A stretch of DNA of 64,000 nucleotides from Rebecca billardiae RCC1528 (lineage: Eukaryota; Protista; Haptophyta), in the NCBI GenBank assembly GCA_965240325.2, contig OZ251234.1, positions 2,209,568-2,273,567 on the forward strand, given 5' to 3'. Each line of letters starts with the position of its first letter. Position 1 is the first letter of the stretch. The position numbers were made by a program, and so were the translations under genes. Positions 13,970 through 52,833 of this stretch are shown piece by piece. A model generated the notes under the pieces. It saw only the letters and a program-made list of their open reading frames with translations, did no database searches and had not been told where the DNA came from.

Positions 13970-14198
13970 CGTCGCCGCGCGATGATCGCCAATAATAGCG
14001 CGCACGGACGCCGGACCGAATGTCCGGATGACCATATATCGGCGATTGATGTGCCAGCCAATCATTGATGGTCCTTTGCCCGACCGTCCGGACCCGCGTC
14101 AGCCTCACTCAGCCTCCAATCACCGGACTCTGGGCGCCCGCCAGGGCCGGACTTTTGGGCATGGCTCAGTCCTCACCCAGCACGGCGATGGCGGCCGA

Positions 14199-15374: not shown

Positions 15375-15762
15375 CGTACCGGTAGCGCAGCGGGTTGGGA
15401 ATCGGTGAATCGCCGTTGTGCGGGTAGCTTCTCCTTCTGGTCAGTGCGTCGATATTGGACTGACACCCTCATTTACCGCTATCATAAACCGCCACGTCAA
15501 TAATGGGTCGCAAGCGCCCAACAGGTTTTCGACGGGCTGGCCAATTATGGGAAAGAGAACTTGAGACGTTGAGGCCGTACGGGTACCTTGTTGAGACGTG
15601 GTCAGACTTTCGACTGACGAGCGGCGTCCGGTACCCGCACATAGACTGACGGAGAGCACCCGCGCGCGCGCCGTCGCAGAGGGTTATTCTTAGCTCGCCC
15701 TTCTTCGCACGGGGCCACAACGCGCGATGCTCGCCCCGCGCCACCGAGGGCGCGAGCGAGCC

Positions 15763-18700
15763 ATGGCGCGGGCCGCGGCGTCCGCCGCGGTGCTGATCCT
15801 TGCCGCTTGCGTGCCCGACCTGCGCTCCCTCACCTTCCCGCCGCCGCCGTCCCGCGCCTCCTGCGCGGGGACGGCTGCCGCCGGTGCGGAGGCCCTGCCC
15901 GCGCCTTTCGGCCGCGCGCTGCGTGCAGGCGGGCTGAGCGGCGCCGTGTGGCGTGTGCCGTTGGCGCTGACGGTCGCTATGGGGCCTACGCGCCAGACGC
16001 CCGCCGCGGGTGCGCTGCTCAGCCTCGCCGCGTCGGCGGTCATTGGCGCAGCGCCTGCAAGCGCGCAGACGATCAGCCCACCGCCGTTCCCGCCGCCGAG
16101 CCCGCCGCCGGGCCCGCCGCCGAGCTCACCGCCGAGCCCGCCGCCGAGCCCGCCGCCATCACCGCCACCGCCACCCCCCCCGGGCCCGCCGCCGAGCCCG
16201 CCGCCGAGCCCGCCGCCGGACCCGCCGCCGAGCTCACCGCCGAGCCCGCCGCCGAGCCCGCCGCCAAACCCGCCGCCGCCGCCGCAGCCGAGCCCGCCGC
16301 CGAGCCCGCCGCCGGACCCGCCGCCGAGCTCACCGCCGAGCCCGCCGCCGAGCCCGCCGCCAAACCCGCCGCCGCCGCCGCCGCCGAGCCCGCCGCCGAG
16401 CCCGCCGCCGGACCCGCCGCCGAGCTCACCGCCGAGCCCGCCGCCGAGCCCGCCGCCAAACCCGCCGCCGCCGCCGCAGCCGAGCCCGCCGCCAAGCCCG
16501 CCGCCGGACCCGCCGCCGAGCTCACCGCCGAGCCCGCCGCCGAGCCCGCCGCCAAACCCGCCGCCGCCGCCTCCGCCGAGCCCGCCGCCGAGCCCGCCGC
16601 CGGACCCGCCGCCGAGCTCACCGCCGAGCCCGCCGCCGAGCCCGCCGCCAAACTCGCCGCCGCCGCCGCAGCCGAGCCCACCGCCAAGCCCGCCGCCGGA
16701 CCCGCCGCCGAGCTCACCGCCGAGCCCGCCGCCGAGCCCGCCGCCAACACCGCCGCCGCCGCCGCAGCCGAGCCCGCCGCCAAGCCCGCCGCCGGACCCG
16801 CCGCCGAGCTCACCGCCGAGCCCGCCGCCGAGCCCGCCGCCAAACCCGCCGCCGCCTCCGCAGCCGAGCCCGCCGCCAAGCCCGCCGCCAAGCCCGCCGC
16901 CGAGCCCGCCGCCCAGCCCGCCGCCAAGCCCGCCGCCAAGCCCGCCGCCGAGCCCGCCGCCGAGCTCGCCGCCGAGCCCTCCGCCGGACCCGCCGCCGAA
17001 CCCACCCCCGAGCCCGCCGCCAAGCTCACCGCCGAGCCCGCCGCCGAGCCCGCCGCCGCCGCCGCCGCCCCCGCCGCCCCCGCCGCCGCCCCCGCCGCCC
17101 CCCCCGCCGCCGCCCCCGCCGCCCCCCCCGCCGCCGCCGCCGAGCCCGCCGCCGAGCCCACCACCGTCGCCACCACCACTGCCGCCACCACCGAGCCCAC
17201 CGCCGCCAAGTCCGCCGCCGCCAAGCCCACCGCCACCGAGCCCGCCGCCGCCGAGCCCGCCGCCACCGAGCCCGCCGCCGCCGAGCCCGCCGCCGCCGAG
17301 CCCGCCGCCGCCGAGCCCGCCACCGCCGGTGCCGCCGCCGCCCAGCCCGCCGCCGCCGAGCCCGCCGCCGCCGAGCCCACCGCCGCCCAGCCCGCCGCCG
17401 CCCAGCCCGCCGCCACCAGTGCCGCCGCCGCCGAGCCCGCCGCCGCCGAGCCCTCCGCCACCGAGCCCGCCGCCGCCGAGCCCGCCGCCGCCGGTCCCGC
17501 CGCCGCCGAGCCCGCCGCCGCCGAGCCCGCCGCCGCCGAGCCCACCGCCGCCGAGCCCGCCGCCGCCGGTGCCGCCGCCACCGAGCCCACCGCCGCCGGT
17601 GCCGCCGCCGCCGAGCCCGCCGCCACCGAGCCCGCCGCCGCCGAGCCCACCGCCGCCGGTGCCGCCGCCGCCGAGCCCGCCGCCGCCGGTGCCGCCGCCG
17701 CCGAGCCCGCCGCCGCCGAGCCCGCCACCGCCGGTGCCGCCGCCGCCCAGCCCGCCGCCGCCGAGCCCGCCGCCGCCGAGCCCACCGCCGCCCAGCCCGC
17801 CGCCGCCCAGCCCGCCGCCACCAGTGCCGCCGCCGCCGAGCCCGCCGCCGCCGAGCCCTCCGCCACCGAGCCCGCCGCCGCCGAGCCCGCCACCGCCGGT
17901 GCCGCCGCCGCCCAGCCCGCCGCCGCCGAGCCCGCCGCCGCCGAGCCCACCGCCGCCCAGCCCGCCGCCGCCCAGCCCGCCGCCACCAGTGCCGCCGCCG
18001 CCGAGCCCGCCGCCGCCGAGCCCTCCGCCACCGAGCCCGCCGCCGCCGAGCCCGCCGCCGCCGGTCCCGCCGCCGCCGAGCCCGCCGCCGCCGGTGCCGC
18101 CGCCGCCCAGCCCGCCGCCGCCGAGCCCGCCGCCGCCGAGCCCACCGCCGCCCAGCCCGCCGCCGCCCAGCCCGCCGCCACCAGTGCCGCCGCCGCCGAG
18201 CCCGCCGCCGCCGAGCCCTCCGCCACCGAGCCCGCCGCCGCCGAGCCCGCCGCCGCCGGTCCCGCCGCCGCCGAGCCCGCCGCCGCCGAGCCCGCCGCCG
18301 CCGGTGCCGCCGCCACCGAGCCCACCGCCGCCGGTGCCGCCGCCGCCGAGTCCGCCGCCGCCGAGCCCGCCGCCGCCAAGCCCACCGCCGCCCAGCCCGC
18401 CACCGCCCAGCCCGCCGCCGCCGAGCCCACCGCCACCATCATCGCCACCTCTGCCGCCGCCGCCAAGTCCGCCACCGCCAAGCCCTCCGCCACCCAGTCC
18501 ACCACCGCCGAGCCCGCCGCCGCCGAGCCCACCGCCACCGCTGCCGCCCCCAAGCCCGCCACCGCCGAGCCCGCCGCCGCCGAGCCCGCCGCCGCCGAGC
18601 CCACCGCCGCCGAGCCCTCCGCCGCCGAGCCCACCGCCACCGATGCCCCCACCGAGCCCGCCGCCGCCCAGTCCGCCGCCGCCAAGCCCGCCGCCGCCGA

Positions 18701-21700
18701 GCCCGCCGCCACCGAGCCCGCCGCCACCGAGCCCGCCGCCGCCCAGCCCGCCACCGCCGAGCCCGCCACCGCCGTTGCCACCGCCGAGCCCGCCGCCTCC
18801 AAGCCCGCCGCCTCCTAGCCCGCCGCCGCCCAGCCCGCCACCACCCAGCCCGCCTCCGCCCAGCCCACCACCGCCGTTGCCGCCGCCGAGCCCGCCGCCT
18901 CCGAGCCCGCCGCCGCCTAGCCCACCGCCGCCGAGCCCACCGCCACCGAGCCCGCCGCCGCCCAGCCCGCCACCGCCGTTGCCACCGCCGAGCCCGCCGC
19001 CTCCGAGCCCGCCGCCACCGAGCCCGCCACCACCGAGCCCGCCGCCGCCCAGCCCGCCACCGCCGAGCCCGCCACCGCCGTTGCCACCGCCGAGCCCGCC
19101 GCCTCCGAGCCCGCCGCCGCCGAGCCCGCCGCCACCGAGCCCGCCGCCGCCCAGCCCGCCACCGCCGAGCCCGCCACCGCCGTTGCCACCGCCGAGCCCG
19201 CCGCCTCCGAGCCCGCCGCCGCCGAGCCCGCCACCGCCGAGCCCGCCGCCGCCGAGCCCGCCGCCGCCGAGCCCACCGCCGCCGAGCCCTCCGCCGCCGA
19301 GCCCACCGCCACCGATGCCCCCACCGAGCCCGCCGCCGCCCAGTCCGCCGCCGCCAAGCCCGCCGCCGCCGAGCCCGCCGCCACCGAGCCCGCCGCCACC
19401 GAGCCCGCCGCCGCCCAGCCCGCCACCGCCGAGCCCGCCACCGCCGTTGCCACCGCCGAGCCCGCCGCCTCCAAGCCCGCCGCCTCCTAGCCCGCCGCCG
19501 CCCAGCCCGCCACCACCCAGCCCGCCTCCGCCCAGCCCACCACCGCCGTTGCCGCCGCCGAGCCCGCCGCCTCCGAGCCCGCCGCCGCCTAGCCCACCGC
19601 CGCCGAGCCCACCGCCACCGAGCCCGCCGCCGCCCAGCCCGCCACCGCCGTTGCCACCGCCGAGCCCGCCGCCTCCGAGCCCGCCGCCACCGAGCCCGCC
19701 ACCACCGAGCCCGCCGCCGCCCAGCCCGCCACCGCCGAGCCCGCCACCGCCGTTGCCACCGCCGAGCCCGCCGCCTCCGAGCCCGCCGCCGCCGAGCCCG
19801 CCGCCACCGAGCCCGCCGCCGCCCAGCCCGCCACCGCCGAGCCCGCCACCGCCGTTGCCACCGCCGAGCCCGCCGCCTCCAAGCCCGCCGCCGCCGAGCC
19901 CGCCGCCACCGAGCCCGCCGCCGCCCAGCCCGCCACCGCCGAGCCCGCCACCGCCGTTGCCACCGCCGAGCCCGCCGCCTCCGAGCCCGCCGCCACCGAG
20001 CCCGCCGCCACCGAGCCCGCCGCCGCCCAGCCCGCCACCGCCGAGCCCGCCACCGCCGTTGCCACCGCCGAGCCCGCCGCCTCCGAGCCCGCCGCCACCG
20101 AGCCCGCCGCCACCGAGCCCGCCGCCGCCCAGCCCGCCACCGCCCAGCCCGCCACCGCCGTTGCCACCGCCGAGCCCGCCGCCTCCGAGCCCGCCGCCTC
20201 CTAGCCCACCGCCGCCGAGCCCACCGCCACCGAGCCCGCCGCCGCCGAGCCCACCGCCACCGCTGCCGCCGCCCAGCCCGCCGCCGCCCAGCCCGCCTCC
20301 GCCCAGCCCGCCACCACCGAGCCCACCGCCGCCGCTGCCGCCGCCCAGCCCGCCGCCGCCCAGCCCGCCGCCACCAAGCCCGCCACCGCCGAGCCCACCG
20401 CCACCGCTGCCGCCGCCCAGCCCGCCGCCACCCAGCCCGCCGCCGCCCAGCCCGCCGCCGCCCAGCCCGCCTCCGCCCAGCCCGCCACCGCCGAGCCCAC
20501 CGCCGCCGCTGCCGCCGCCTAGCCCGCCGCCGCCCAGCCCGCCGCCACCAAGCCCGCCACCGCCGAGCCCACCGCCGCCGCTGCCGCCGCCCAGCCCGCC
20601 GCCACCCAGCCCGCCGCCGCCCAGCCCGCCGCCGCCAAGCCCACCGCCACCGCTGCCGCCGCCCAGCCCGCCGCCACCCAGCCCCCCGCCGCCCAGCCCG
20701 CCACCGCCGAGCCCGCCACCGCCGCTGCCGCCTCCGCCGCCGCCGTCGCCGCCGCCCAGCCCGCCGCCCAGCCCGCCGCCCAGCCCGCCGCCGCCGAGCC
20801 CGCCGCCGCCAAGCCCGCCGCCACCGAGCCCGCCGCCTCCCAGCCCGCCGCCACCGAGCTCGCCGCCACCGCCACCTCCGTCGCCGCCGCCGAGCCCGCC
20901 TCCGAGCGCGCCGCCGAGCCCGCCGCCCAGCCCGCCGCCGCCGAGCCCGCCGCCACCCAGCCCACCGCCGCCGAGTCCGCCGCCACCCAGCCCACCGCCG
21001 CCGAGTCCGCCGCCGCCGCCCCCGCCGTCGCCGCCGCCCAGCCCACCTCCGAGCCCGCCTCCGAGCCCGCCGCCCAGCCCACCGCCCAGCCCGCCGCCGC
21101 CCAGCCCGCCGCCACCCAGCCCACCGCCGCCGAGTCCGCCGCCACCCAGCCCACCGCCGCCGAGTCCGCCGCCGCCGCCCCCGCCGTCGCCGCCGCCCAG
21201 CCCACCTCCGAGCCCGCCGCCCAGCCCACCGCCCAGCCCGCCGCCACCCAGCCCGCCGCCACCAAGCCCGCCGCCGCCGAGCCCACCGCCACCGCTGCCG
21301 CCGCCGAGCCCGCCGCCGCCCAGCCCGCCGCCACCCAGCCCGCCACCGCCGAGCCCGCCACCGCCGCTGCCGCCTCCGCCGCCGCCGTCGCCGCCGCCCA
21401 GTCCGCCGCCCAGCCCGCCGCCCAGCCCGCCGCCGCCGAGCCCGCCGCCGCCCAGCCCGCCGCCACCGAGCCCGCCGCCTCCCAGCCCGCCGCCACCGAG
21501 CCCGCCGCCACCGCCACCTCCGTCGCCGCCGCCGAGCCCGCCTCCGAGCGCGCCGCCGAGCCCGCCGCCCAGCCCGCCGCCGCCGAGCCCGCCGCCACCC
21601 ATCCCACCGCCGCCGAGTCCGCCGCCACCCAGCCCGCCGCCGCCGAGTCCGCCGCCGCCGCCCCCGCCGTCGCCGCCGCCCAGCCCACCTCCGGGCCCAC

Positions 21701-22000
21701 CTCCGAGCCCGCCGCCCAGCCCACCGCCCAGCCCGCCGCCGCCCAGCCCGCCGCCACCCAGCCCACCGCCGCCGAGTCCGCCGCCACCCAGCCCGCCGCC
21801 GCCGAGCTCGCCGCCACCGCCTCCGCCGTCGCCGCCGCCCAGCCCACCTCCGAGCCCGCCGCCGCCGAGCCCGCCGCCACCGAGCCCTCCACCGCCCAGC
21901 CCGCCGCCGCCGAGCTCGCCGCCGCCGCCGCCGCCCTCGCCGCCGCCGAGCCCGCCGCCGAGCCCGCCGCCGAGCCCACCGCCGCCGAGCCCACCGCCGC

Positions 22001-22032
<32 letters not shown>

Positions 22033-22803
22033 AGCTCGCCGCCGCCACCACCGCCGTCCCCACCACCAAGCCCGCCGCCTTCGCCGCCGCCACCGCCGCC
22101 GCCATCCCCGCCGCCGAGTCCGCCGCCAAGCCCGCCGCCAAGCCCTCCGCCGCCGAGCCCACCGCCGCCAAGCCCACCGCCGCCGAGCCCGCCGCCGCCA
22201 AGCCCGCCGCCGCCGAGCTCGCCGCCACCGCCACCGCCGTCTCCACCGCCATCCCCGCCGCCCAGCCCGCCGCCGCCTCATCCGCCGCCGCCGCCGCCTC
22301 CCACGCCCCCACCCAGCCCGCCGCCGAGCCCGCCGCCGCCGAGCCCGCCCCCGCCGAGCCCGCCGCCGCCGAGCCCGCCGCCGCCGAGTCCGCCGCCGCC
22401 GAGCTCGCCGCCGCCACCACCGCCGTCCCCACCGCCAAGCCCGCCGCCGTCGCCGCCGCCACCGCCGCCGCCATCCCCGCCGCCGAGTCCGCCGCCACGC
22501 CCGCCGCCAAGCCCTCCGCCGCCGAGCCCACCGCCGCCGAGCCCGCCGCCGCCGAGCCCGCCGCCGCCAAGCCCGCCGCCGCCGAGCTCGCCGCCACCGC
22601 CACCGCCGTCTCCACCGCCATCCCCGCCGCCCAGCCCGCCACCGCCTCATCCGCCGCCGCCGCCGCCTCCCACGCCCCCACCCAGCCCGCCGCCGAGCCC
22701 GCCGCCGCCAAGCCCACCGCCGCCGAGCCCGCCGCCGCCGAGCCCGCCGCCGCCGAGCTCGCCGCCGCCGCCGCCACCGAGCCCGCCGCCGAGCCCGCCG
22801 CCG

Positions 22804-22836
<33 letters not shown>

Positions 22837-22974
22837 CCACCCACGCCGCCCCCCAGCCCGCCGCCGAGCCCGCCGCCGCCAAGCCCACCGCCGCCGAGCC
22901 CGCCGCCGCCGAGCCCGCCGCCGCCGAGCTCGCCGCCGCCGCCGCCACCGAGCCCGCCGCCGAGCCCGCCGCCG

Positions 22975-23006
<32 letters not shown>

Positions 23007-23145
23007 ACCTCCAACGCCGCCCCCCAGCCCGCCGCCGAGCCCGCCGCCGCCAAGCCCACCGCCGCCGAGCCCGCCGCCGCCGAGCCCGCCGCCGCCGAGC
23101 TCGCCGCCGCCGCCGCCACCGAGCCCGCCGCCGAGCCCGCCGCCG

Positions 23146-23178
<33 letters not shown>

Positions 23179-23317
23179 CCACCCACGCCGCCTCCGAGCC
23201 CGCCGCCGAGCCCGCCGCCGCCGAGGCCGCCGCCGCCGAGCCCACCGCCGCCGAGCCCGCCGCCGCCGAGCTCGCCGCCGCCGCCGCCGCCTTCGCCGCC
23301 GCCGAGCCCGCCGCCGC

Positions 23318-23349
<32 letters not shown>

Positions 23350-25377
23350 CCTCCCACGCCGCCGCCGAGCCCGCCGCCAAGCCCTCCGCCGCCGAGCCCG
23401 CCGCCGCCGAGCCCTCCGCCGCCGCGCCCGCCGCCGCCGAGCTCGCCGCCGCCGCCGCCACCATCCCCGCCACCGAGCCCGCCGCCGAGCTCGCCGCCGC
23501 CGCCGCCGCCTTCGCCGCCGCCGAGCCCGCCGCCGCGCCCGCCGCCGCCGAGCCCGCCGCCGCCCCCGCCCCCCACGCCGCCGCCGAGCCCGCCGCCGAG
23601 CCCGCCGCCGCCGAGCCCACCGCCGCCGAGCCCTCCGCCGCCGAGCCCGCCGCCGCCGAGCTCGCCGCCGCCGCCGCCACCATCCCCGCCGCCGAGCCCG
23701 CCGCCGAGCCCGCCGCCGAGCCCGCCGCCGCCGAGCTCGCCGCCGCCGCCACCTCCCACGCCGCCCCCCAGCCCGCCGCCGAGTCCACCGCCGCCTCTCC
23801 CGCCGCCGCCGAGCCCGCCGCCGCCCAGCCCGCCACCACCCAGCTCGCCGCCGCCCCCTCCGCCCTCGCCGCCGCCCAGCCCCCCGCCAAGCTTGCCGCC
23901 GCCACCGCCGCCCTCACCGCCGCCGAGCCCGCCGCCGAGCTCGCCGCCGCCACCGCCGCCCTCACCGCCGCCGAGCCCGCCGCCGAGCTCGCCGCCGCCG
24001 CGCCCGCCGCCGCCGCCACCACCGACGCCGCCGCCCAGCCCACCACCGAGCCCTCCGCCGCCCAACCCGCCGCCACCCAGCCCACCGCCGCCGAGCCCGC
24101 CGCCGCCGAGCGCGCCGCCGCCGCCGCCGCCCTCGCCGCCGCCGAGCCCGCCACCGCGCCCTCCGCCGCGCTCGCCGCCGCCGCCACCGCCCTCGCCGCC
24201 GCCCTCGCCGCCGCCCTCATCGCCGCCGAGCTTGCCGCCGCCGCCGCCGCCCTCGCCGCCGCCCAGCCCGCCGCCGAGCCCTCCGCCGCCGAGCCCGCCG
24301 CCGCCGAGTCCGCCGCCACCCAGCCCGCCGCCGCCGAGCTCGCCGCCTCCGCCGCCTCCCCCAATCCCGCCGCCTTCTCCGCCGCCATCTCCACCGCCGC
24401 CCCGCGCGCCGCCGCCCCCGCCGCCCAGCCCGCCGCCCTCTCCGCCGCCGCCCAGCCTGCCGCCGCCGCCGCCGCCCAGCCCGCCGCCCAGCCCGCCGCC
24501 CTCTCCGCCGCCGCCCAGCCCGCCGCCGCCGCCGCCGCCCAGCCCGCCGCCCAGCCCGCCGCCCTCTCCACCGCCTCCGAGCCCGCCGCCACCGAGCCCG
24601 CCGCCGCCGAGTCCGCCGCCGCCGAGCGCGCCGCCGCCGCCGCCGCCCACGCAGCCCTTGCCTCCGCCCCCGGCGCCGCCGCCGAGCCCGCCGCCGCCGA
24701 GTGCGCCGCCGCCGCCGCCACCGAGCCCGCCACCGAGCCCGCCGCCGCCGTCGCCACCGCCACCGCCGCCACCAAGCCCACCGCCGTCACCGCCACCGCC
24801 GCCGCCGCCGAGCCCGCCGCCCTCGCCGCCGCCGTACCCGCCGCCACCGCCGCCGCCGAGCCCGCCGCCGAGCCCGCCGCCGCCGCCGCCGCCGAGCCCG
24901 CCGCCCTCGCCACCGCCCCATCCGCCGCCGAGCCCGCCGCCGAGCCCGCCGCCGAGCCCACTGCCGAGCCCGCCGCCGAGCCCGCCGCCGAGCCCGCCGC
25001 CGAGCCCGCCGCCGCCGCCGCCGCCGAGCCCGCCGCCCTCGCCGCCGCCCCATCCGCCGCCGAGCCCGCCGCCGAGCCCGCCGCCGCCGCCGCCGCCGAG
25101 CCCGCCGCCCTCGCCGCCGCCCCATCCGCCGCCGAGCCCGCCGCCGAGCCCGCCGCCGAGCCCACTGCCGAGCCCGCCGCCGAGCCCGCCGCCGAGCCCG
25201 CCGCCGCCGCCGCCGCCGAGCCCGCCGCCCTCGCCACCGCCCCATCCGCCGCCGAGCCCGCCGCCGAGCCCGCCGCCGAGCCCGCCGCCGAGCCCGCCGC
25301 CGGTGCCCCCGCCGGCGCCGCCGCCCAGCCCACCGCCGGCCGCGCCGCGCCCGCCGCCGCCCGCACCGCCGCCGCAA

Positions 25378-25409
<32 letters not shown>

Positions 25410-25584
25410 CGCGCCGCCGCCCTCGCCGCCGCCGCCTGCGCCGCCACCCGCTCCGCCGCCGAGCCCGCCGCCGAGCCCGCCGCCGAGCCCGCCGCCGAGC
25501 CCGCCGCCGGTGCCCCCGCCGGCGCCGCCGCCCAGCCCACCGCCGGCCGCGCCGCGCCCGCCGCCGCCCGCACCGCCGCCGCAA

Positions 25585-25616
<32 letters not shown>

Positions 25617-26439
25617 CGCGCCGCCGCCCTCGCCGCCGCCGCCTGCGCCGCCACCCGCTCCGCCGCCGAGCCCGCCGCCGAGCCCGCCGCCGAGCCCGCC
25701 GCCGAGCCCGCCGCCGAGCCCGCCGCCGAGCCCGCCGCCGAGCCCGCCGCCGAGCCCGCCGCCGAGCCTGCCGCCCTCGCCACCGCCGCATCCGCCGCCG
25801 AGCCCGCCGCCGAGCCCGCCGCCGAGCCCGCTGCCGAGCCCGCCGCCGAGCCCGCCGCCGAGCCCGCCGCCGAGCCCGCCGCCGTCGCCGCCGCCGAGCC
25901 TGCCGCCCTCGCCACCGCCCCACCCGCCGCCGAGCCCGCCGCCGAGCCCGCCGCCGAGCCCGCCGCCGAGCCCGCCGCCGGCGCGCCCGCCGGCGCCGCC
26001 GCCCAGCCCACCGCCGGCCGCGCCGCGCCCGCCGCCGCCCGCACCGCCGCCGCAACCGCCGCCCTCGCCGCCGCCGTCGCCGCCGCCCGAGCCGCCGCCC
26101 TCGCCGCCGCCGCCTGCGCCGCCACCCGCTCCGCCGCCGAGCCCGCCGCCGAGCCCGCCGCCGAGCCCGCCGCCGAGCCCGCCGCCGCCGCCGCCCGCGC
26201 CGCCGCCCTCACCGCCGCCGTCACTGCCGCCTGCGCCGCCGCCGACCCCGCCGCCGAGCCCGCCGCCCTCGCCGCCGCCGAGCCCGCCGCCGCCGCCGCC
26301 GCCCGCGCCGCCGCCGTCGCCGCCGCCCAGCCCGCCGCCCAGCCCGCCGCCCAGCCCGCCGCCGCCCAACGACATGCCGCCGAGCCCGCCGAGCCTGCCG
26401 CCGCCGCCGCCGCCGAGCCCGCCGCCCTCGCCGCCGCCG

Positions 26440-26472
<33 letters not shown>

Positions 26473-26598
26473 CCGCCGAGCCCGCCGCCGAGCCCGCCGC
26501 CCTCGCCGCCGCCGAGCCCGCCGCCCTCGCCGCCGCCGGCGCCGCCGCCGGCGCCGCCGCCCTCGCCGCCGCCCTCGCCGCCGCCGAGCCCGCCGCCG

Positions 26599-26665
<67 letters not shown>

Positions 26666-26685
26666 CGCCGAGCCCGCCGCCGCCG

Positions 26686-26728
<43 letters not shown>

Positions 26729-32700: not shown

Positions 32701-35700
32701 GGCGTGCACCTCGCGCCGCTCTTCTTCGACGAGGTCGTCTTCGAGCTGTACGACATCGCCGACGTGTCGGTCGCCAAGCTCGTGCCGCCCGGCGGGCCGG
32801 TGGCGGGCGGCACGCGCGTCACCGTGTTCGGCACGGGGTTCAAGGAGTACGGCGACGACGCGAGCGAGGCGACCAAGCTGTTGTGCTGCGTGCTCGACCG
32901 CTCGGGCGCGTGCTTCGCCAAGGCGACGCTCCTCGCCGACGAGGCCGGGCTCAACCGCGCGCTGTGCACCGTGCCCGCGCTGGGCGTGGCGGGCAACCAC
33001 ACGCTCGACGTCTCGCTCGCCGGCGGCAGCCTCGCGTCCACCACCGACGCGGGCGTGCGCTTCGTCGTGTACGACGAGCCGCGCGTGGACGCGGTCGCGC
33101 CGGCGGAGGGCAGCGCCGACGGCGGCACGCTCACGACGATCGTCGGGCAGGGCTTCGCCGCGCTCGCCGACGCCGACCTCGGGTACGGCGCGGACCCGGC
33201 GTCGTTCCTGCGCGTGCGGTACGGCCCGACGACCGCCGCGGCGCCGCTCTCGTTCAACGACACGCACATCGTGCAGCTGTCGAGCTGGGGCGCGGACGGG
33301 GCGGCGGCGGTGCGCGTGAGCCTCAACGGGCGGCAGTACGCGCCCGCCGCCGCGGCCGACGCCGCGACCTTCACCTTCGTCGGCCTGCACCCGCCCGCGA
33401 TCGTGGAGGCGCGCTTCAACGACGACGCGACCGCGCTGATCGTGCAGCTCGACGACCAGCCGACCGACCGCGGCGGCATGACGGGCTCGGGGCCGTGCTC
33501 GCAGGTGCTGGACAACGTGACGGTCGCGCGCATCCGCGGCGGCATCGCCGCCGAGCCCGCGTGCCACTGGTCCGACGACTCGACCATCGTCGCGCAGCTC
33601 AACTACCTGACCGAGCTCGCGCCGGGCGACAGCGTGGCTCTGCAGCGCGAGGCGATCAGGCCGCTGCTCTCGGCCGCGCCGTGCCCGACGCTCTGCGCGG
33701 ACGACTCGGCGCTGATCGACGCGGACTTCCCGTGCGAGGCCTGCGTGCAGCCCGCCGCCGCGCTCAACGGCCCGACGCAGGTCTCCGACTGCCCGGGCGA
33801 GTCGATCACGCTCGACGCCTCCGGCTCGGACGGCGGCGGCATCAAGGCGCTCACGTACCGCTGGGCGGTCGACCCGAGCCGCTCCGACTTTGCCGACGAG
33901 CTCAACGCGATCCTCGCGTCCGAGGCGGGCGACTCGGTCACGCTGAGCGACCTGCCCGGCGCGGCGGGCTCGCAGTACGTCTTCCTGCTGCGCGTCGCCT
34001 CCTTCCTCGGCCTCCAGTCCGCGCTCGCCGAGTGGACCGTCACCAAGGTCTCGGGCGCCGCGCCGGGGCTCTCGATCGACGGGCCGTTCACGCAGCTCGT
34101 GCAGCCGGCCAACGAGCTGCTGCTGCAGGGGCGCGCGACGATCGCGGGGTGCTGGCCCGACGGCGTGGACCCGACGGTGGCGTTCGCGTGGATGCACCTC
34201 GGCACGACCGACACGGCGAGCGGCGAGGCGCTCGCCCACGACCTCGGCCTGAGCGGGCTGGACAAGGTGGGGCTGATCGTGCCAGCGTTCAGCCTCACGC
34301 CCGGCCGCACGTACGCGCTGCGCCTCGACGCGACGATGGCGTCCGACGCGTCGGTGGCGTCGAGCGCGGAGGTGCGGCTGCGGGTGATCCAGATGCCGCT
34401 CGCGCCGGTCATCTCCGGCGCCGACCGGCGCGTCTCCTCGCTCGCCGAGCTCGTCGTCGACGGCTCGGCGAGCTACGACCCGAACGCGCCGCCGGGCGCG
34501 GACGCGCTGCTCGCGTACGCGTGGGGCGGCACCAACGGCACCGGCGCGCCCGTCGACTTTGGCGGGCTCGGCGTGGGCACGGACGGGGCGGTGCTGCGCG
34601 TGCCGCCGGAGGCGCTGGAGCCGGGCAACTACACGCTCACGCTCACCCTCTCCAAGCCCAACATGACCGCGCAGTCCGCGTCGATCGGCGTGGAGGTCGT
34701 GTTCGAGCGCGTGCCGATCATCTCGTTTGCGCCGCTGACCGCGACCAAGTACAACGTCGAGTGGGACCTGCCGTCCGAGCGGTTCGCGCTGCAGGCGACG
34801 CTGGACGAGGGCTCGCGCGCGGACGCGGCGGCGGGGCGGGTGCGCTTCGCCTACGCCTGGCGCGCCTTCGTCGACACGCCCGCCGGCTACGTCGACGCCG
34901 GGCTCGAGCTGTCGAACGCGGAGCGCGTGACGACGACCGGCGCGGCGACGCTCTCGCTCGCCTTCCGCTCGGGCACGCTACAGCCGGGCGCGCTGTACAG
35001 CTTCGAGCTCACGGTGAGCGGCGGGGCGCGCGACGCGTTCGCCTCCGTCACGATCCAGATGAACCGGCCGCCGTACGGCGGCGGCTTCTTCGTCACGCCC
35101 AAGTCGGGCGGGCGCGCGGTGAACGACGACTTCACGCTGCACGCGACCGGCTGGACGGACGACCGCGAGGACCTGCCGCTCTCGTACGGCTTCGAGTACC
35201 AGGAGGCGGGCACCGACGTGGTGGAGGTGCTGGAGGAGCTGGTCAAGGCGAGCACCCTGCGCGCCAAGCTGCCGCAGGGCACGCTCGCCATCGCCGTCCG
35301 CGTCTTCGACGTGCACGGCGCGTCGACGCGCGCGAGCAGCAGCGTGGTGGTCGAGGCCGCGCAGCTTGACTGCGCGGCCGTGCAGGCCGAGCTGGACGCG
35401 GCGTACCGGGACTCGGTGTCGGGCAACGGCGGGCGCGCGCTGCGCTCGCAGTCGGCGCTCGCCAAGACGGGCTCGTCGAGCGACTGCGCGACGAGCCGCG
35501 GCAGCTCGGCGCGCCGCCGCCTCCAGCGGCGGCTGCAGGCCGCGGAGGACGGCGGCGCGCCGAACGGCACCGCGGCCAACGGCACCAACGGCACCGCGCC
35601 CTTCGACTGCGCGGACGCGGAGGACGCGACGGAGGAGATGCTCTCGATCGTCGGCATCGTGGCGAACTCGACGGTGACCACCTCCACGCTGCGCCGCCAG

Positions 35701-38700
35701 CTCGCCGGCGTGCTCGCCGCCGTGCTCGGCGCGAACGCGTCGGCGCTCTCGGCGTGCGCGCAGCTCGCGGGCGTCGAGCTCGCGCTCGACGTGATCATCG
35801 AGACGACCGCCACCGGCGTCGACGCGTCGGCGGCGTCGTCGCTGTTCACGTCGATCGTGTCGGTGCTGCAGGGGAACACGACGGCGTTCGACAACGCCAC
35901 GCTCGCCTGGCTCAACGCCGCGGCGACCGAGGCCGTCGCGACGATGGGCTCGTCCTTCCTCGCGTTCTCGGTCGCGGACGAGGCGAGCTCGGAGCTGAGC
36001 GCGGACAACCTCAACATGAGCGCCGCGCGCAAGTCGGGCTCGTCGGTGGCGAACGCGTCGATCGCGGGGCCGGGCGGCGCGGGCGGCGTGCTCGTGCCCT
36101 CCACCGTCTTCGACGGCCAGCTCGCCAACGAGACCGCCGCCGTCGACGTCGTGCAGTACCTCTTCTCGCGGAACACGCAGGGCGACCCCGCCGAGCAGCC
36201 CGGGCTGGGCGCGCTCACGACCGGCGTCTACTCGATCACGCTCGCCTCGTCGAGCAGCGGCGCCGAGCTGGCGATCGGCGACCTCGCCGAGCCGATCATC
36301 GTGGCGATCCCGCTCACCAACGAGGACGACCGCGTGTACGGGCCGGCGGGCGACTGCTCCGAGTTCGCCGCGTGCAACGGCCGCGGCGCGTGCGTGCGCG
36401 CGGACGGCGCGCCCGCGCACGGCGCCAACGGCACCGCCGCCGCCGCCAACGGCACCGCCGCCGCCGCCAACGGCACGGCCGCGGGCGGCGGCGCGGCGGC
36501 GTGCTTCTGCGACGCGCCGTGGTACGGGCCGAGCTGCCTGCTGCAGGCGGTGTGCCACTACTGGGACGTCGCCGACGAGCGCTGGTCCACCGACGGCTGC
36601 GCGACCGTCGACACGCCCGCGGGCGGCGACAACGGCACGCTCTACTGCGCGTGCACGCACCTCACCGACTTTGGCGGCGTCAGCGTGCCCACCAGCCCGG
36701 AGGAGCTCGAGGCGGACGCGTCGCAGGTGACGTTCAACACGTTCGGCGCGGACGACGCCGCCGCCGTCTTCACCACGCCGCCCGACCAGCTGCTCGCGCA
36801 GAACCCGTCGATCTTCATCCTGATCGGCACGCTCAGCGGCGCGTGCCTGGCGGCCATTGCGCTCGGCTACTGGAAGGACGGCCGCGACGACAGGCGCGCC
36901 GCGGCGAAGAAGGCGGCGGCGGAGGCGGCGGCGGCGAAGGCGGCGGACGAGGTGGCGCAGGCCGAGACCCTCGCGCTCGCGCAGCTCTCGCGCGCCGACG
37001 CCGCCGCCGACGCGGTCGACGCGCGGCTCGAGGCGATGGACGCGGCGATGGTCGAGGCGCGGCGCAAGGCGGCGCGCGTGATGACCAAGCACGCGCGCGG
37101 CCGCACGGTGCGCAAGAAGACGCACGAGGCGGCGGCGGCGGAGGACCCGGAGGAGCAGGCGCGGCTGCTCGCGGAGGTGCGCCGGCTGAGCACCGCCACC
37201 GCCGCCACCGACGCCGCGCCCGCCGCCGAGCCCGCGGCGAGGAAGCAGCGGCGGCTGACGCGCGCGGTGCGCGCGCTCGTGGAGGCGCTCGAGTCCGACC
37301 ACACCGTCCTCGGGCTCTACTTCGGGCACGACCCGGAGATCAGGCGGCCGCAGCTGGTGATGATCCTGTTCACGCTGCTGATGCTCGAGGTGCTCGTCGA
37401 GTGCATCCTCTTCGCGCCCTCCTCCTCCTCCGCCGGCCCGATCAACCTGACCGTGATCGTGATCAACGCGCTCATCTGCGCGGGCATCGCCGCGCCCGCC
37501 ATCGTCCTCATGAAGGCGCTGTGGCACTGGGGCTACGAGAAGCCCGCGCCGATCGTCGCGCGGCTGGCGAAGCTCGCGAACGTCGCGGTGGCGCCGAGCG
37601 TGCGCACCAAGCGCCGCTCGATGCTCGCCGGCGCGAAGGACTTTGCGGGCGTGCGGCCGGGCAGCGGCGGCACCAGCCGCGCGCCCAGCCGGCCCACCAG
37701 CGCAGGCTCCGCGGGCTTCGGCTCCGCGGGCTCGAGCTTCGGCTCCGGCCGCAAGAGCGGCGCCAAGGCGCGGCCGGGGAGCGCGGCGGGCGGGCGCGCG
37801 AGCGTGGGCGGCGCGCCGCCCAGCTGGAGCAAGCGCGTCGACGAGTACATCGCGCGCCAGGCGGCCGCCGAGGACGAGGACGACGACTTTGGCACGAGCG
37901 GGCTCGTCGCGCCGCCCGCCTCGCCCGCCGTCTCGCAGCACGCGCGCGCGCGGCACGCGCCGCCGCCGCCGGGCGGGATCGCCGAGGGCGCGGCGGACGA
38001 CGAGCGGCCCGCCTCGCCGCCGCCCTCGCCGCCGCGCCCCGGCCGCCCCTTCCGCCGCGGCCGGCTGGAGCAGAGCACCGTGCACATGGCGGGCGCGGAC
38101 GCGGCCGCGGCGGGCGGCGCGCGCCGGCCGGCGGCGCGCTCGGCGCGCGCGCGCCGCGCCGAGGTCGCGGCGGTGCACGCGGAGGAGGGCGCGGCGGAGG
38201 AGGAGCAGGGCGACGGGCGCGGGAGCGGCTCGGTCCTCTCGCGCCGCGCGCGCGCCGCGCTCGTCGCGATCCACGCGGAGCAGGCGGAGGAGGCGGCGGA
38301 GGCGGACGCGGCCGAGGCGGCGGCGGACGCGGCCGCGCTCGCGGCCACGCCGCCGCGCGCCGTGCGCTCGCCGAGCGGCAGCCCGGTGCTGCGCGGGCGC
38401 GCGCACCGTGCGGGCGGCGGCGCCTCGCCGCAGTCCGCCGTGCGCGTGCACCGCGAGTCGCCGCTCATCCGCTCGCGCCGCGGCAAGATGTCGCCGTCGC
38501 CGCCGCTCGAGCCTCGGGCGGGCGGCGGCGCGCCGCGGATGCCGCCGCTGGCGCTGGGCGAGATGGCGGCCGGCACGGGCGCGCGCGGCGCGTCGCCGCG
38601 CCCCGGCTCGGCGGGCTCGGCGGGCTCCGCCCAGCTCTCGCGCCCGGGCTCGGGCCGCTCCCGCCTGATGCTCGCGAGCGTGCCGCAGCTGCCGGGCACG

Positions 38701-40946
38701 GCCGCGGCGGTCGGGTGCGCGCCGGACGGCCCCGCACTTGGCGGCACGACCTACTCGCCTCTGCGCGCGCCGCCCTCGCCGCGCACGGGCGACACGCCGC
38801 GCTCGGACGTGTCGGCGGGCTCGGAGGGCGCGAGCGTGGCGAGCGGCACGAGCCGCGGCGAGGCGGCCGCGCGCCTCGCCGCCTCCTTCGGCGCGGCCGC
38901 CGCCGCCGACGCCGACGCCGACTGCGCCGACGCGGCCGCCGAGGGCGTGCGCGGGCGCGGGGTGCGCGGGGTGGCGCGCAGCGGGGTGGCGCGCAGCAGC
39001 AGCAGCCCGTCCAGCCGTGCAGAGGCAGAGGCGGAGGCGGAGGCAGAGGCAGAGGCAGAGGCAGAGGCGCGCGCGGACTCGGAGGCGGACGGCGATGGCT
39101 CCTGGCTGCGCACGGGCGCGGGCGCGCTGCAGACGCACCTCGAGCAGCTCGCGACGCGCGAGCAGCGCCGCGGCTCGTGGTTCAAGCGGCCTCGGCTGCA
39201 CACCGAGGAGTTTGCAGACTCGCCGCGCACGCTGCCCGGCTCACCGGGCGGGCCGAGCGCGCCGCAGAGCGCGCGCTCGGCGCGCGCCGCCGAGGGCGGG
39301 GCGGAGGGCGCGCCGCAGGGCGCGCCGCGCGCGCGCGCGCCGCCGCCGGCGCGCGTGTGTGCCGAGCGCGTGGGCTCAGAGCGCGTGGGCTCACGCCGCG
39401 GCTCGGCCGACAGCACCGGCAGCGGCGGCGGCAGCGGCAAGCGCTCCTCCGGCGGGCGAGCGGCCGCGCCGCCGCCGCCGCCGCCGCCGGCGGCGGCCGC
39501 GCGGCCGTCGAGTCGCGAGGGCGGGCTGAAGCGGCCGGGCAGCCGCGAGGCGAACGTGAAGGTGGTCGAGGTGGCGCCCGCCGTGCGCGTGCCGAGCCGC
39601 GAGCGCGCCCGCCCGCCCGCCGGCTCAGAGCCGCGCGCGGCCAGCATCGAGGCCGTCACGCGCAGCGCGGGCGCCGCGGCCGCGAGCGCCTACCAGGACC
39701 CGCCGCCGCGCGCCAGGCCGCCGCCGCCGCCGCCGCCGCGCGCCGAGCCCGGCTCGGCGGGCGCGGAGGGCGGCGCGCCCATCACGCCCGCAGGGCCCGC
39801 GGCCGCCTCGTCGCGCGTCCTGCCCACGCCGACCGCGGGCGCGAGCGCGGCCGCGGGCGCCGCCGCGGCGGGCGCGCCCGCGGGCGCCGCCGCGGCGGGC
39901 GCGCCCGCGGGCGCGTGCCGCAAGGTGCGGATCTCGCTGCCGACCGGGCCCCCCGCGGGCGAGGGCGAGGGCGGCAGCGTGGCGTCGTCGCCCGCGACGC
40001 GCGGCGCGCGCGGCTCCCGCGCCTCGCGCCCCTCTCGGCCGTCCAACGCGCGCGCCGCCCGCCCGTCCAAGGCCGAGTCCGTCCTCTCCGAGATCGCAGA
40101 CTCGCAGCGGGAGCGCATCGCCTCGCTCGTGGGCAAGACGGAGCTGCGCGCGGTCGCGGCCAGGGTGCGCGGCGGCTCGGCGTACGTGATGACCTCGCGC
40201 GAGCTCTCCGAGATGTGGCGCTCGTTCAAGAAGTTCGACAAGGACGGCTCGGGCGAGCTGCAGGCGACCGAGCTGCGCGCGCTCATGCGCACGCTCGGCA
40301 TGCGGCTGTCCGAGGCCGAGGCGGAGGTGCTCGTCAAGGAGCTCGACGCAAACGACACGGGCGGCATCGAGTTCTCGGAGCTGGTCGCGTGGTACACCGA
40401 CCGGATGAACGTGCGCGCCCGCGCGCCGCGCGACCGCCGCCGCCGCCGCCGCCGCCGCCTGCCGCCGCGCCCACCGCCCACTGCTCAGCGCTGCCCCCCC
40501 TCCCCTGCGCTGCCCCCCTCCGGCGCCCCCCTCCCGCGCAGGCGTTCGAGGAGGCGGAGGCGGAGCGGCGCAAGAAGCGCTCGAGGCTGCGCGTGATCTG
40601 GGAGGACAAGATGAAGCTGCCGCGCCGCGCCAAGATCACCATCGCGTGGGCCACGTGCTGGTGCCTGTACATCGGCGCCGCGTACCTCTCGGTCGTGTTT
40701 GCCGTGATGTTTGGCGAGCACGTCTTCTCGGCGCTGCTGCAGGCGTGGGGCCTGGCGCTCACGCAGACGTTCGTGGTGGACGAGCCGTTCATCATCTGGC
40801 TGTACCTGCTCATCCCGACGATCCTCGACGCGCTCACGTCCAACGACCTCGCCGCCGAGCTGCTCGCCAACTTCATCGCCTCGGGCGTGGGGCAGGCGCT
40901 GGCCGGCTGCGTCAACGTCGTCAAGGCGATCGGCGGCGGCGGCTGA
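15763..40946 (+). CDS. Giant polycystin-1/PKDREJ-like surface receptor (~8,350 aa): extensin-like stalk, 17 beta-rich repeats, 5 IPT/TIG, REJ, EGF-like, GPS, ~5 TM, IQ-like, 2 EF-hands
   Basis: A 24.6-kb open frame, an intron at 40411-40541 (GTGCGC...CGCAG) and a last exon ending at 40946. GPS motif: CHYWD..WSTDGC..LYCACTHLTDF. EF loops: DKDGSGELQATE and DANDTGGIEFSE. The start could instead be the ATG at 15727 or 15979. Confidence 0.88.
16075..26796 (+). repeat. Coding Ser-Pro(3-6) extensin-like repeat array (~3,574 codons)
   Basis: AGC(CCG)n units continue for 10.7 kb in frame with no stop codon. Higher-order duplications are present, for example a 672-bp offset between 18643 and 19315. 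Confidence 0.97.
26800..31790 (+). repeat. 17 tandem ~97-aa coding repeats, including a near-identical DNA duplication (offset ~1,443 bp)
   Basis: The consensus is P..t.aV.GVaE.v.F.G.G...GD.a.W...C...YGG...aSFT...L.LCY.F.GEP..LY. Segment 28183-29027 matches 29626-30467 almost exactly. Confidence 0.92.

Positions 40947-52131: not shown

Positions 52132-52165
<34 letters not shown>

Positions 52166-52776: not shown

Positions 52777-52833
<57 letters not shown>

What the first reader, a model, noticed from the sequence alone, without database searches (positions are those of the whole stretch)
15763..40946. ~8,350-aa extensin-stalk polycystin-1-like receptor with built-in EF-hands
Seen in sequence, in order: signal-like N-terminus, ~3,570-aa SP3-6 array, 17 repeats, 5 IPT-like domains, REJ-like region, EGF-like motif, intact GPS (HL|T at 36658-36666), TM1, an IQ-like motif (VMTKHARGRTVRK), 2 TM segments, a ~900-aa disordered loop ending in an EF-hand pair, and 2 more TM segments. 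No PLAT domain or 6-TM channel module was recognised. Established knowledge: REJ-GPS-TM is the PKD1 architecture, GPS sites autoproteolyse, and a polyproline II helix rises ~0.31 nm per residue, so the stalk could reach ~1.1 micron. Inference: a cleavable, Ca2+-regulated mechanosensory or adhesion filament, such as a flagellar hair, haptonema or cell-coat component.
Basis: partly seen in the sequence, partly recalled or inferred. Interest (0 to 1): 0.8.

Follow-up and report, generated by a model that had tools for sequence, protein, structure and literature searches.

The report
Giant proline-filament polycystin-1-like surface receptor
A very GC-rich alga encodes a real membrane protein of about 8,360 residues: a free proline filament that could reach about 1.1 micrometre, then 22 Ig-like domains, then the self-cleaving front half of a polycystin-1-type receptor with its own calcium-binding module; it is one of about 90 such genes in this genome.

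Summary
Window 15727-40410 is one unbroken 8,228-codon exon. A 131-nt GT-AG intron (40411-40541) joins it to a last exon, 40542-40946.

In order, tools confirm:
- a signal-like N-terminus;
- a 3,576-residue Ser-Pro3-4 array;
- 17 two-Cys repeats (no Pfam family; confident Ig/TIG-like fold);
- 5 TIG segments;
- a PKD-like domain and REJ (E 6e-48);
- a GAIN fold with a canonical GPS;
- TM1, an IQ-type motif, TM2-3, and an ~890-residue loop;
- a canonical EF-hand pair;
- at least 2 further TM segments.

There is no PLAT domain and no channel half.

One correction: the proline array is not a stalk under a head. It sits at the distal N-terminus with no head domain. The upstream ORF is a separate kinase gene.

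The gene belongs to a family of about 90 REJ loci in this genome, which this scan has already reported on other contigs. Relatives elsewhere keep the same order, with Ser-Pro segments from ~100 to 3,576 residues.

The closest functional precedent is Chlamydomonas Mstax, by analogy rather than homology.

No sequencing run was listed. Transcript continuity, array length, cleavage, glycosylation and location are therefore untested.

The parts
15727..16071 (+). N-terminal region, aa 1-115. Start candidates are Met1 (15727), Met13 (15763, signal-like hydrophobic core aa 14-30) and Met85 (15979, cleaner signal peptide ending ..APASA|QT just before the array). No folded head domain.
   Evidence: no Pfam hit; unrelated to the Cys-rich cap and promoter of paralogue C27.
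16072..26799 (+). Ser-Pro3-4 array: 3,576 aa, 742 X-Pn units, one Tyr only. Predicted polyproline-II filament of about 1.1 micrometre if extended.
   Evidence: longest exact internal DNA repeat 656 nt. The same position holds ~100 aa in relative P0001, 690 aa in C19 and 2,380 aa in C27.
26800..31779 (+). 17 tandem ~97-aa two-Cys repeats with an Ig-like / E-set (TIG-like) fold and no Pfam family. A 5-unit block is duplicated.
   Evidence: AlphaFold pLDDT 93.4. VIA-align Z 8.1 to the CNNM4 ectodomain, 7.9 to plexin IPT, 7.7 to CAMTA1 TIG.
31789..33390 (+). Five IPT/TIG segments.
   Evidence: E 1.9e-4, 0.18, 0.018, 6.7e-6, 5.2e-6; whole-segment E 1.3e-19.
33790..34005 (+). PKD-like Ig domain (K319L-like_PKD).
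   Evidence: E 2.9e-8, 34 bits against a cut-off of 27.
34300..35376 (+). REJ domain.
   Evidence: PF02010, E 6.4e-48; own-genome hit at this place, 162 bits.
35626..36675 (+). GAIN domain: helical subdomain A, beta-sandwich subdomain B, GPS at 36553-36675, and predicted cleavage HL|T at 36658-36666. A six-Cys EGF-like insert with NGT sequons lies at 36355-36537.
   Evidence: model, pLDDT 66, core 70-90. (Foldseek: BAI3 GAIN 7.9e-11, BAI2 2.4e-10, CELSR1, latrophilin). (C..W..W..GC..CxCxHLTxF invariant in 8 relatives)..
36664..36747 (+). Post-cleavage stalk (tethered-peptide position), conserved across the family (T.F....VPTS...NTF).
   Evidence: invariant columns.
36811..36867 (+). TM1.
   Evidence: Kyte-Doolittle 2.26.
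37078..37116 (+). IQ-type motif in cytoplasmic loop 1. Degenerate here (M-T-xxx-RG-xxx-R), canonical [VLI]QxxxRGxxxR in relatives.
   Evidence: alignment. (the family profile's best PDB hits are IQ proteins RSP23 at 0.021, Sp17 at 0.048 and the myosin-5A IQ at 0.4, all aligned on this motif; marginal E-values).
37354..37509 (+). TM2 (37354-37410) and TM3 (37453-37509), with a 14-aa outer loop carrying an NLT sequon. Preceded by the conserved E.DHTVLGL.FG...RRP.L motif.
37510..40176 (+). Low-complexity cytoplasmic loop of ~890 aa. Coding signal is kept, but the sequence has diverged strongly from paralogue C27.
   Evidence: GC3 0.93-1.00 in nearly all 40-codon windows, against a flat 0.86-0.91 in the intron. 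(66-75% DNA identity to C27, against 96-99% in the ectodomain).
40219..40398 (+). EF-hand pair. Loops DKDGSGELQATE and DANDTGGIEFSE both have canonical Ca2+ ligand positions.
   Evidence: EF-hand_7, 6.6e-10. The pair is conserved in 5 of 6 distant cluster representatives and in P0004 and P0005.
40411..40541 (+). Intron, 131 nt, GT..AG, phase 0.
   Evidence: P0005 reads contiguously across it. In C27 the equivalent stretch is diverged but in frame.
40542..40946 (+). Last exon, 134 aa plus stop. TM4 at ~40635-40715, a weaker amphipathic segment, TM5 at ~40785-40835, and a short C-terminal tail.
   Evidence: Nearly identical in C27. No Pfam hit.

Best explanation
This is one functional gene of two exons for a multi-pass surface glycoprotein of about 8,360 residues.

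From the membrane outwards it has:
- a 5-helix (possibly 6-helix) anchor;
- a GAIN domain with an intact GPS;
- a REJ domain and a PKD-like domain;
- 5 TIG domains and 17 Ig-like domains (roughly 90 nm);
- at the free N-terminal end, a 3,576-residue Ser-Pro3-4 filament.

The filament is probably hydroxylated and O-glycosylated into a stiff polyproline-II thread of up to ~1.1 micrometre.

Shown here: the architecture, the folds, and conservation of the order across relatives.

Inferred working:
1. The thread acts as a tether or drag element.
2. Pull on it is passed to the GAIN/GPS junction, which is non-covalently held after autoproteolysis.
3. Displacing the N-terminal fragment exposes the conserved post-cleavage stalk to the 5-TM bundle.
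4. The cytoplasmic EF-hand pair (TM3-4 loop) and the IQ helix (TM1-2 loop) couple this to Ca2+, perhaps by binding each other in cis.
5. A separately encoded PKD2-type channel may be the partner.

The gene is a headless member of a family of about 90 genes whose other members carry ligand-binding heads at the tip of the rod.
For: Gene reality:
- Pfam hits lie in one frame across 9 kb.
- All ectodomain indels against paralogue C27 are multiples of 3, and dN/dS is 0.26 (repeats) and 0.39 (PKD/REJ).
- GC3 is about 1.0 through the loop.
- The intron is supported by a contiguous relative.

Array as coding sequence:
- It is in frame with the signal peptide and the body in three independent loci, at different lengths.
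- A ~100-aa Ser-Pro segment sits at the same position in a relative from another organism.

Folds:
- Repeat model pLDDT 93, Ig/TIG-like.
- GAIN fold.

Signalling parts:
- GPS and stalk residues are invariant.
- The EF-hand pair is conserved in 5 of 6 distant relatives.
- IQ-type motif.

Genomic setting:
- At least 25-30 PKD_channel loci are encoded elsewhere.
- At least 49 P4H-type and at least 36 GT77-type loci exist in the genome.

Precedent: Mstax has ~8,000 aa, a distal N-terminus, Hyp-rich thread segments (a Ser-Hyp-rich N-terminal segment and a ~660-nm repeat stem) and a polycystin-type anchor.
Against: - No RNA or read evidence: none was listed.
- The 10.7-kb array length rests on the assembly alone. 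Its longest exact internal repeat is 656 nt.
- The N-terminus is unrelated to the closest paralogue's cap, so this could be a 5'-replaced young copy.
- dN/dS is near 0.9 in several segments, although few differences were available.
- The IQ motif is degenerate in this copy.
- The 5-TM bundle showed no detectable sequence similarity to any solved structure, PC1 included.
- Hyp glycosylation in this lineage is only inferred.
- No Tyr cross-link motifs are present.
Confidence: 0.6

Rival explanations
1. It is a structural hair or coat axis rather than a receptor. The Ser-Pro thread is the shaft of a surface or flagellar filament, possibly sheathed by other glycoproteins as Mst1 sheathes Mstax. 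The REJ-GPS-5TM part is only the anchor.
For: The Mstax precedent. The array is distal and headless. The thread reaches micrometre length. The glycosylation enzyme families are large.
Against: A plain anchor would not need conserved GPS and stalk residues, an IQ motif and an EF-hand pair. About 90 paralogues, many with ligand-binding heads according to earlier scan notes, look more like a receptor repertoire. No Mstax-type Hyp11-(X2Hyp)n-Hyp12 repeats and no PKD2-like TM region are present.
Confidence: 0.22
2. It is a young, 5'-replaced duplicate with no function of its own. It is kept similar to the C27 copy by gene conversion and is drifting towards pseudogene status.
For: The ectodomain is 96-99% identical to C27, while the cytoplasmic loop is only 66-75% identical and the 5' end is unrelated. 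It has no cap or head. dN/dS is about 0.9 in the TIG, GAIN and TM segments.
Against: There are 8,228 codons without a stop or frameshift. All ectodomain indels are in frame. The intron keeps GT-AG and the last exon is conserved. GC3 is coding-like throughout. Both EF loops are canonical.
Confidence: 0.1
3. It is an artefact of the gene model or the assembly. The array may be inflated or mis-joined, or it may be partly intronic or untranslated, so that the real protein starts near the repeats.
For: At 87% GC other frames are also open. The array could not be checked with reads. In C27 a real intron is read through in frame, so in-frame introns can hide.
Against: The signal peptide, array and body share one frame at three loci with different array lengths. 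A short Ser-Pro segment sits at the same site in another organism's relative. The array has structured sub-blocks rather than one collapsed unit. At 10.7 kb it is within the span of long reads.
Confidence: 0.08

Closest known systems
Polycystin-1 / PKDREJ / sea-urchin suREJ family (REJ-GPS receptors), including the brown-alga candidate Esi0130_0068 (PMC4700764)
   Same: A PKD-like Ig domain, REJ domain, GAIN/GPS with HL|T, then TM1 immediately after the cleavage site. Large modular ectodomain. Link to Ca2+ signalling.
   Different: No PLAT in the first cytoplasmic loop. Only 5 (possibly 6) TM segments instead of 11. No channel-like TM6-11 or TOP domain. Instead it has an IQ-type motif and an internal EF-hand pair, plus a 3,576-aa Ser-Pro array and 17 novel Ig-like repeats. 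No sequence similarity to solved PC1 chains was detected.
Chlamydomonas Mstax, the mastigoneme axial protein (bioRxiv 10.1101/2024.12.24.630281, citing Huang et al. 2024)
   Same: About 8,000 residues. The N-terminus is at the distal tip. A Hyp-rich linear thread hundreds of nm long. A polycystin-type membrane anchor with a cytosolic part.
   Different: Mstax has lectin domains, 34 Hyp11-(X2Hyp)n-Hyp12 repeats and a PKD2-like channel-type TM region. This protein has SPPP/SPPPP units, Ig/TIG domains, REJ-GAIN/GPS and a non-channel 5-TM anchor. No homology was shown, so the resemblance is by design only.
Adhesion GPCRs (GAIN-GPS plus 7TM)
   Same: A predicted GAIN fold that matches BAI2/3, CELSR1 and latrophilin GAIN domains. 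A conserved GPS and post-cleavage stalk, consistent with a tethered-peptide, force-triggered mechanism.
   Different: No class-B 7TM domain. The TM count is 5-6. REJ lies upstream.
Extensins and algal hydroxyproline-rich glycoproteins (from my own knowledge: Chlamydomonas sexual agglutinins)
   Same: Ser-Pro3-4 repeats of the kind that are hydroxylated and arabinosylated into PPII rods. Agglutinins are flagellar-membrane adhesion fibrils.
   Different: No Tyr cross-linking motifs (1 Tyr in 3,576 aa). Integral multi-pass membrane anchor. Hyp modification in this lineage is untested.
This scan's 'giant stalked REJ-GPS-5TM receptor' family in the same genome (s1-363204, s1-338770, s1-332068)
   Same: The same base: TIG-REJ-GPS-5TM. 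Here I add that the EF-hand pair and IQ-type motif are conserved across relatives of this base. A Ser-Pro rod is present, and the same genome has about 90 REJ loci.
   Different: Those members carry a lectin, RCC1 or LRR head at the tip and many introns. This one has no head, the rod is the N-terminal end, there is only one intron, and the rod is much longer (~1.1 micrometre, against ~0.36-0.4 micrometre for the two members whose rod length the notes give).

Membership tests
Polycystin-1 (PKD1) family sensu stricto | REJ domain | tested here: met
   PF02010, E 6.4e-48, 163.9 bits.
Polycystin-1 (PKD1) family sensu stricto | GAIN domain with a GPS immediately before TM1 | tested here: met
   PF01825 2.8e-6. 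GAIN fold matches at E 7.9e-11. All motif residues present.
Polycystin-1 (PKD1) family sensu stricto | PLAT domain in the first cytoplasmic loop | tested here: not met
   No PLAT hit in aa 7048-7210 at E<=1. The whole genome has only 2 PLAT loci, neither coinciding with a listed REJ locus.
Polycystin-1 (PKD1) family sensu stricto | 11 TM segments with a channel-like C-terminal six-TM half | tested here: not met
   5, possibly 6, hydrophobic segments. No PF08016 hit. The gene ends at 40946, and the listed PKD_channel loci include none on this contig.
Adhesion GPCR | GAIN/GPS | tested here: met
Adhesion GPCR | Class-B 7TM domain | tested here: not met
   No 7tm Pfam hit. 5-6 TM segments only.
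Extensin-type HRGP | Ser-Pro3-5 repeats | tested here: met
   318 SPPPP and 206 SPPP units.
Extensin-type HRGP | Tyr-containing cross-link motifs; secreted wall protein | tested here: not met
   One Tyr in 3,576 aa. C-terminal TM segments are present.
Extensin-type HRGP | Pro hydroxylation and O-arabinosylation | not testable with these tools
   Circumstantial only: at least 49 P4H-type and at least 36 GT77-type loci in the genome.
Mstax-like mastigoneme axial protein | PKD2-like TM region | tested here: not met
   No PF08016 hit.
Mstax-like mastigoneme axial protein | Hyp11-(X2Hyp)n-Hyp12 repeats and lectin domains | tested here: not met
   Unit census and Pfam scans.
Mstax-like mastigoneme axial protein | Location as the axis of a flagellar hair | not testable with these tools
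   Needs microscopy or proteomics.
REJ-GPS-TM-IQ-EF-hand 'half-polycystin' family (this scan; no published name found) | GPS-stalk-TM1-IQ-TM2-TM3 module followed by an EF-hand pair and terminal TM segments | tested here: met
   The profile of this module finds 299 cluster representatives (27 at E<=1e-30) among 1.84 billion. 5 of 6 tested carry the EF-hand pair, 5 of 6 GPS and 3 of 6 REJ; several are short. At least 90 own-genome matches.

The most novel reading that the evidence does not exclude
Members of this family are themselves the fine surface or flagellar hairs of this alga. Each hair would be the ectodomain of a self-cleaving polycystin-1-type mechanoreceptor: a micrometre-long glyco-thread whose pull is read out at the GAIN/GPS joint and converted to a Ca2+ signal by a built-in EF-hand/IQ pair. 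That would be an independent, channel-less counterpart of the Mstax-PKD2 mastigoneme of green algae.
Probability: 0.15. Interest if true: 0.85.

Novelty: new variant of a known kind. Interest (0 to 1): 0.6.

Why it matters
Polycystin-1 and adhesion-GPCR GAIN domains are thought to sense force, but what pulls on them is debated. Here the GAIN/GPS joint is fused to a thread that could be about a micrometre long, and a Ca2+-binding module is built into the same chain. The gene sits in a family of about 90 members whose Ser-Pro segments range from 100 to over 3,500 residues. That gives a natural series for testing how tether length, cleavage and Ca2+ feedback relate. It also points to candidate components of the poorly known cell surface of Pavlova-like haptophytes. 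Finally, it shows that gene callers and ORF-based views can miss or mis-split such genes.

Tried and rejected
Read evidence:
- The look-up of sequencing runs on 31800-37800 listed no run. Read laying could therefore not be used, and there was no read or RNA test.

Homologue searches:
- phmmer of REJ-GPS-TM against PDB sequences: no hit.
- Profile of the TM module against the PDB: no polycystin hit, only marginal IQ-motif hits.
- Word search for giant kin (4.5-14.5 k aa) carrying the 17 repeats: blank. Given the length window and the word method, this says little.
- Word search with a 1,401-aa REJ-GAIN-TM query: only 3 hits.

Fold search:
- Foldseek of the repeat model against the PDB: only weak Ig V-domain hits (E ~0.01). 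VIA-align then gave TIG/E-set matches at middling Z.

Gene structure:
- Looked for a head exon upstream. The upstream ORF is a protein kinase gene ending at 15374, and no cap-like sequence occurs anywhere in the window.
- Looked for hidden in-frame introns in the loop by codon-position GC. None was evident.

Other checks:
- Tested whether the 6,448-aa ORF on C16 with a PKD_channel hit is an Mstax-like gene. It is not Pro-rich.
- Literature searches for REJ or polycystin in haptophytes gave nothing relevant. Most hits were 'Polycystinea'.

Exon handling:
- The two exons were searched separately by reference.
- No joined protein was saved, printed, or sent to any search or fold tool.
- In one search a script joined candidate exon ends in memory only, to test the reading frame.

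Full report
**1. The observation**

The window is extremely GC-rich: 75-90% over the feature. ORF 15727..40596 on the + strand runs 8,289 codons without a stop.

It opens a signal-like hydrophobic stretch.
- A third Met at 15979 gives an even cleaner signal peptide, ending just before the array.
- After the EF-hand pair the frame decays into Arg/Pro junk.
- A GT..AG intron of 131 nt (40411-40541) restores a conserved last exon, 40542-40946.

Two things support the splice:
- In a relative's 4.9-kb contig (P0005), the EF-hand pair runs straight into the homologous TM segments.
- In paralogue C27, the flanks are nearly identical while the intervening stretch is diverged.

**2. Domain by domain**

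- **Array.** It is 3,576 aa, 77.7% Pro and 17.8% Ser. It has 742 X-Pn units, chiefly SPPPP (318) and SPPP (206), arranged in sub-blocks with different higher-order patterns.
- **Repeats.** Seventeen ~97-aa two-Cys repeats follow. They have no Pfam family. With an alignment of 26 units the model is confident (pLDDT 93.4). It is an Ig-like beta-sandwich. The best matches are the CNNM4 ectodomain (Z 8.1) and then IPT/TIG domains: plexin Z 7.9, CAMTA1 7.7, EBF1 7.2. These Z values are middling, so only the fold class is claimed.
- **TIG, PKD, REJ.** Five TIG segments, three of them over the Pfam cut-off. A PKD-like domain and REJ at E 6.4e-48.
- **GAIN/GPS.** The 439 aa before TM1 model as five helices plus a beta-sandwich ending in the GPS (pLDDT 66, core 70-90). 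Foldseek returns GAIN domains first: BAI3 7.9e-11, BAI2, CELSR1, latrophilin. The GPS signature C..W..W..GC..CxCxHL|TxF is invariant in eight relatives, including an oomycete protein.
- **EGF-like motif.** Here it is a six-Cys insert with NGT sequons. Relatives give sub-threshold EGF_Teneurin hits at the same spot.
- **Membrane part.** TM1, then a helical loop with an IQ-type motif, then TM2 and TM3.
- **IQ motif.** It is degenerate in this copy but canonical ([VLI]QxxxRGxxxR) in relatives. The family profile's best PDB hits, though marginal, are IQ proteins aligned on that motif.
- **Loop and EF-hands.** An ~890-aa low-complexity loop keeps the coding signature: GC3 is about 1.0, against a flat 0.86-0.91 in the intron. 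It ends in an EF-hand pair whose two loops have canonical ligand positions.
- **Last exon.** Two clear TM peaks and one weaker peak.
- **Absent.** There is no PLAT and no PKD_channel.

**3. Correction of topology**

The array is not a stalk under a head.
- The ORF just upstream (14028-15374, +) is a protein kinase with its own stop.
- The 350 nt between it and the ATG have stops in all frames.
- The first 115 aa have no domain hit.

With the TM segments at the C-terminus, the folded domains are therefore membrane-proximal, and the Ser-Pro thread is the free distal end.

**4. Family and relatives**

- The genome (72 Mb, 41 contigs) has 103 REJ matches, roughly 90 loci. Many lie in open frames of 5,000-21,000 codons. 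The TM module finds about the same set.
- Earlier notes of this scan describe members on other contigs with lectin, RCC1 or LRR heads. So this family was found before on other DNA.
- **Closest paralogue, C27.** It has a signal peptide, an 85-aa six-Cys cap, a 2,380-aa array and the same 17 repeats. The ectodomain and TM1-3 are 96-99% identical at DNA level, and every indel there is in frame. The cytoplasmic loop is only 66-75% identical, and the 5' end is unrelated. This mosaic suggests gene conversion of the ectodomain.
- **Paralogue C19.** It has a ~2,000-aa head, a 690-aa array and 12 repeats.
- **Another organism.** P0001, from Logan contigs of run SRR30664515, has a small head, a ~100-aa Ser-Pro segment, 12 repeats and the same base.

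The position of the Ser-Pro segment is therefore conserved while its length varies 35-fold.

An exhaustive profile search with the GPS-stalk-TM1-IQ-TM2-3 module finds 299 cluster representatives (27 at E<=1e-30) among 1.84 billion. Five of six examined have the downstream EF-hand pair. The 'built-in EF-hands' are thus a family trait.

**5. Mechanism**

The sequence shows a PC1-type REJ-GAIN/GPS ectodomain on a non-channel 5-TM anchor, with cytoplasmic IQ and EF-hand elements and a distal proline thread.

The following steps are inferred:
- The thread is hydroxylated and glycosylated into a PPII rod. The genome has at least 49 P4H-type and at least 36 GT77-type loci, which is circumstantial.
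- The thread acts as a tether or drag element.
- Force at the cleaved GPS exposes the conserved stalk to the TM bundle.
- Ca2+ feedback runs through the EF-hand pair, possibly binding the IQ helix in cis. Both are cytoplasmic by the N-out topology.
- A PKD2-type channel may be the partner; at least 25-30 such loci are encoded separately.

The main rival reading is a purely structural hair axis like Mstax. Mstax has ~8,000 aa, a distal N-terminus, Hyp-rich thread segments and a polycystin-type anchor.

**6. Comparison and novelty**

REJ-GPS multi-TM proteins are known in animals and have been noted in a brown alga (PMC4700764). Hyp-rich threads on a polycystin-type anchor are known from Mstax.

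I found nothing in the searched literature on:
- a REJ-GAIN/GPS front half without PLAT or channel;
- an IQ motif plus an internal EF-hand pair in such a protein;
- micrometre-scale Ser-Pro arrays on it;
- its expansion to about 90 genes.

It is a new variant of a known kind. Within this scan it is a further, headless, long-threaded member of a family already reported.

**7. Limits**

- No sequencing run was listed. Expression, the array length, cleavage, glycosylation and localisation are therefore untested.
- The organism's identity ('Pavlova-like' in earlier notes) was not tested here.

Noticed in passing
window 14028-15374 (+): A separate protein kinase gene (Pkinase, E 4.5e-31) ends 350 nt upstream of the giant gene's ATG.
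   Followed up: partly
window 26800-37509 versus L004-L006 (G000:C27:538297-559344): The similarity to the C27 paralogue is a mosaic. The ectodomain and TM1-3 are 96-99% identical, the cytoplasmic loop 66-75%, and the 5' end unrelated. This suggests gene conversion limited to the ectodomain.
   Followed up: partly
L006 (C27 paralogue, 3' end): The equivalent of the 131-nt intron is in frame and stop-free in the C27 copy, so a plain ORF reads straight through it. In this GC-rich genome, in-frame introns can hide inside long ORFs.
   Followed up: partly
L010-L012 (G000:C16:~880,600-900,000, minus strand): A 6,448-codon open frame, Ala/Gly-rich rather than Pro-rich, with LRR-like and ankyrin-like stretches seen by eye. 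A PKD_channel match (E 2.5e-8) lies near its C-terminus. It may be a giant intracellular-domain polycystin-2-type channel.
   Followed up: partly
G000:C17:2190921-2193914 (about 16-19 kb before the window): A second REJ-GPS-TM family member (open frame 4,436 codons) lies in tandem upstream.
   Followed up: no
whole genome G000: There are at least 49 P4H-type 2OG-oxygenase loci, at least 36 GT77 (Nucleotid_trans) loci, and at least 25-30 PKD_channel loci. These are large families for a 72-Mb genome.
   Followed up: no
window 44160-46736 (-) and 50895-54656 (-): The downstream ORFs are an EF-hand protein and a Patched / sterol-sensing-domain protein. Between them and the giant gene, 41-44 kb drops to 50-66% GC and was not examined.
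   Followed up: no
P0001 residues 1-120 (L003): This relative's small head ends in a two-Cys motif (C..NYDPTATFDDASC) just before its short Ser-Pro segment. It was not identified.
   Followed up: no
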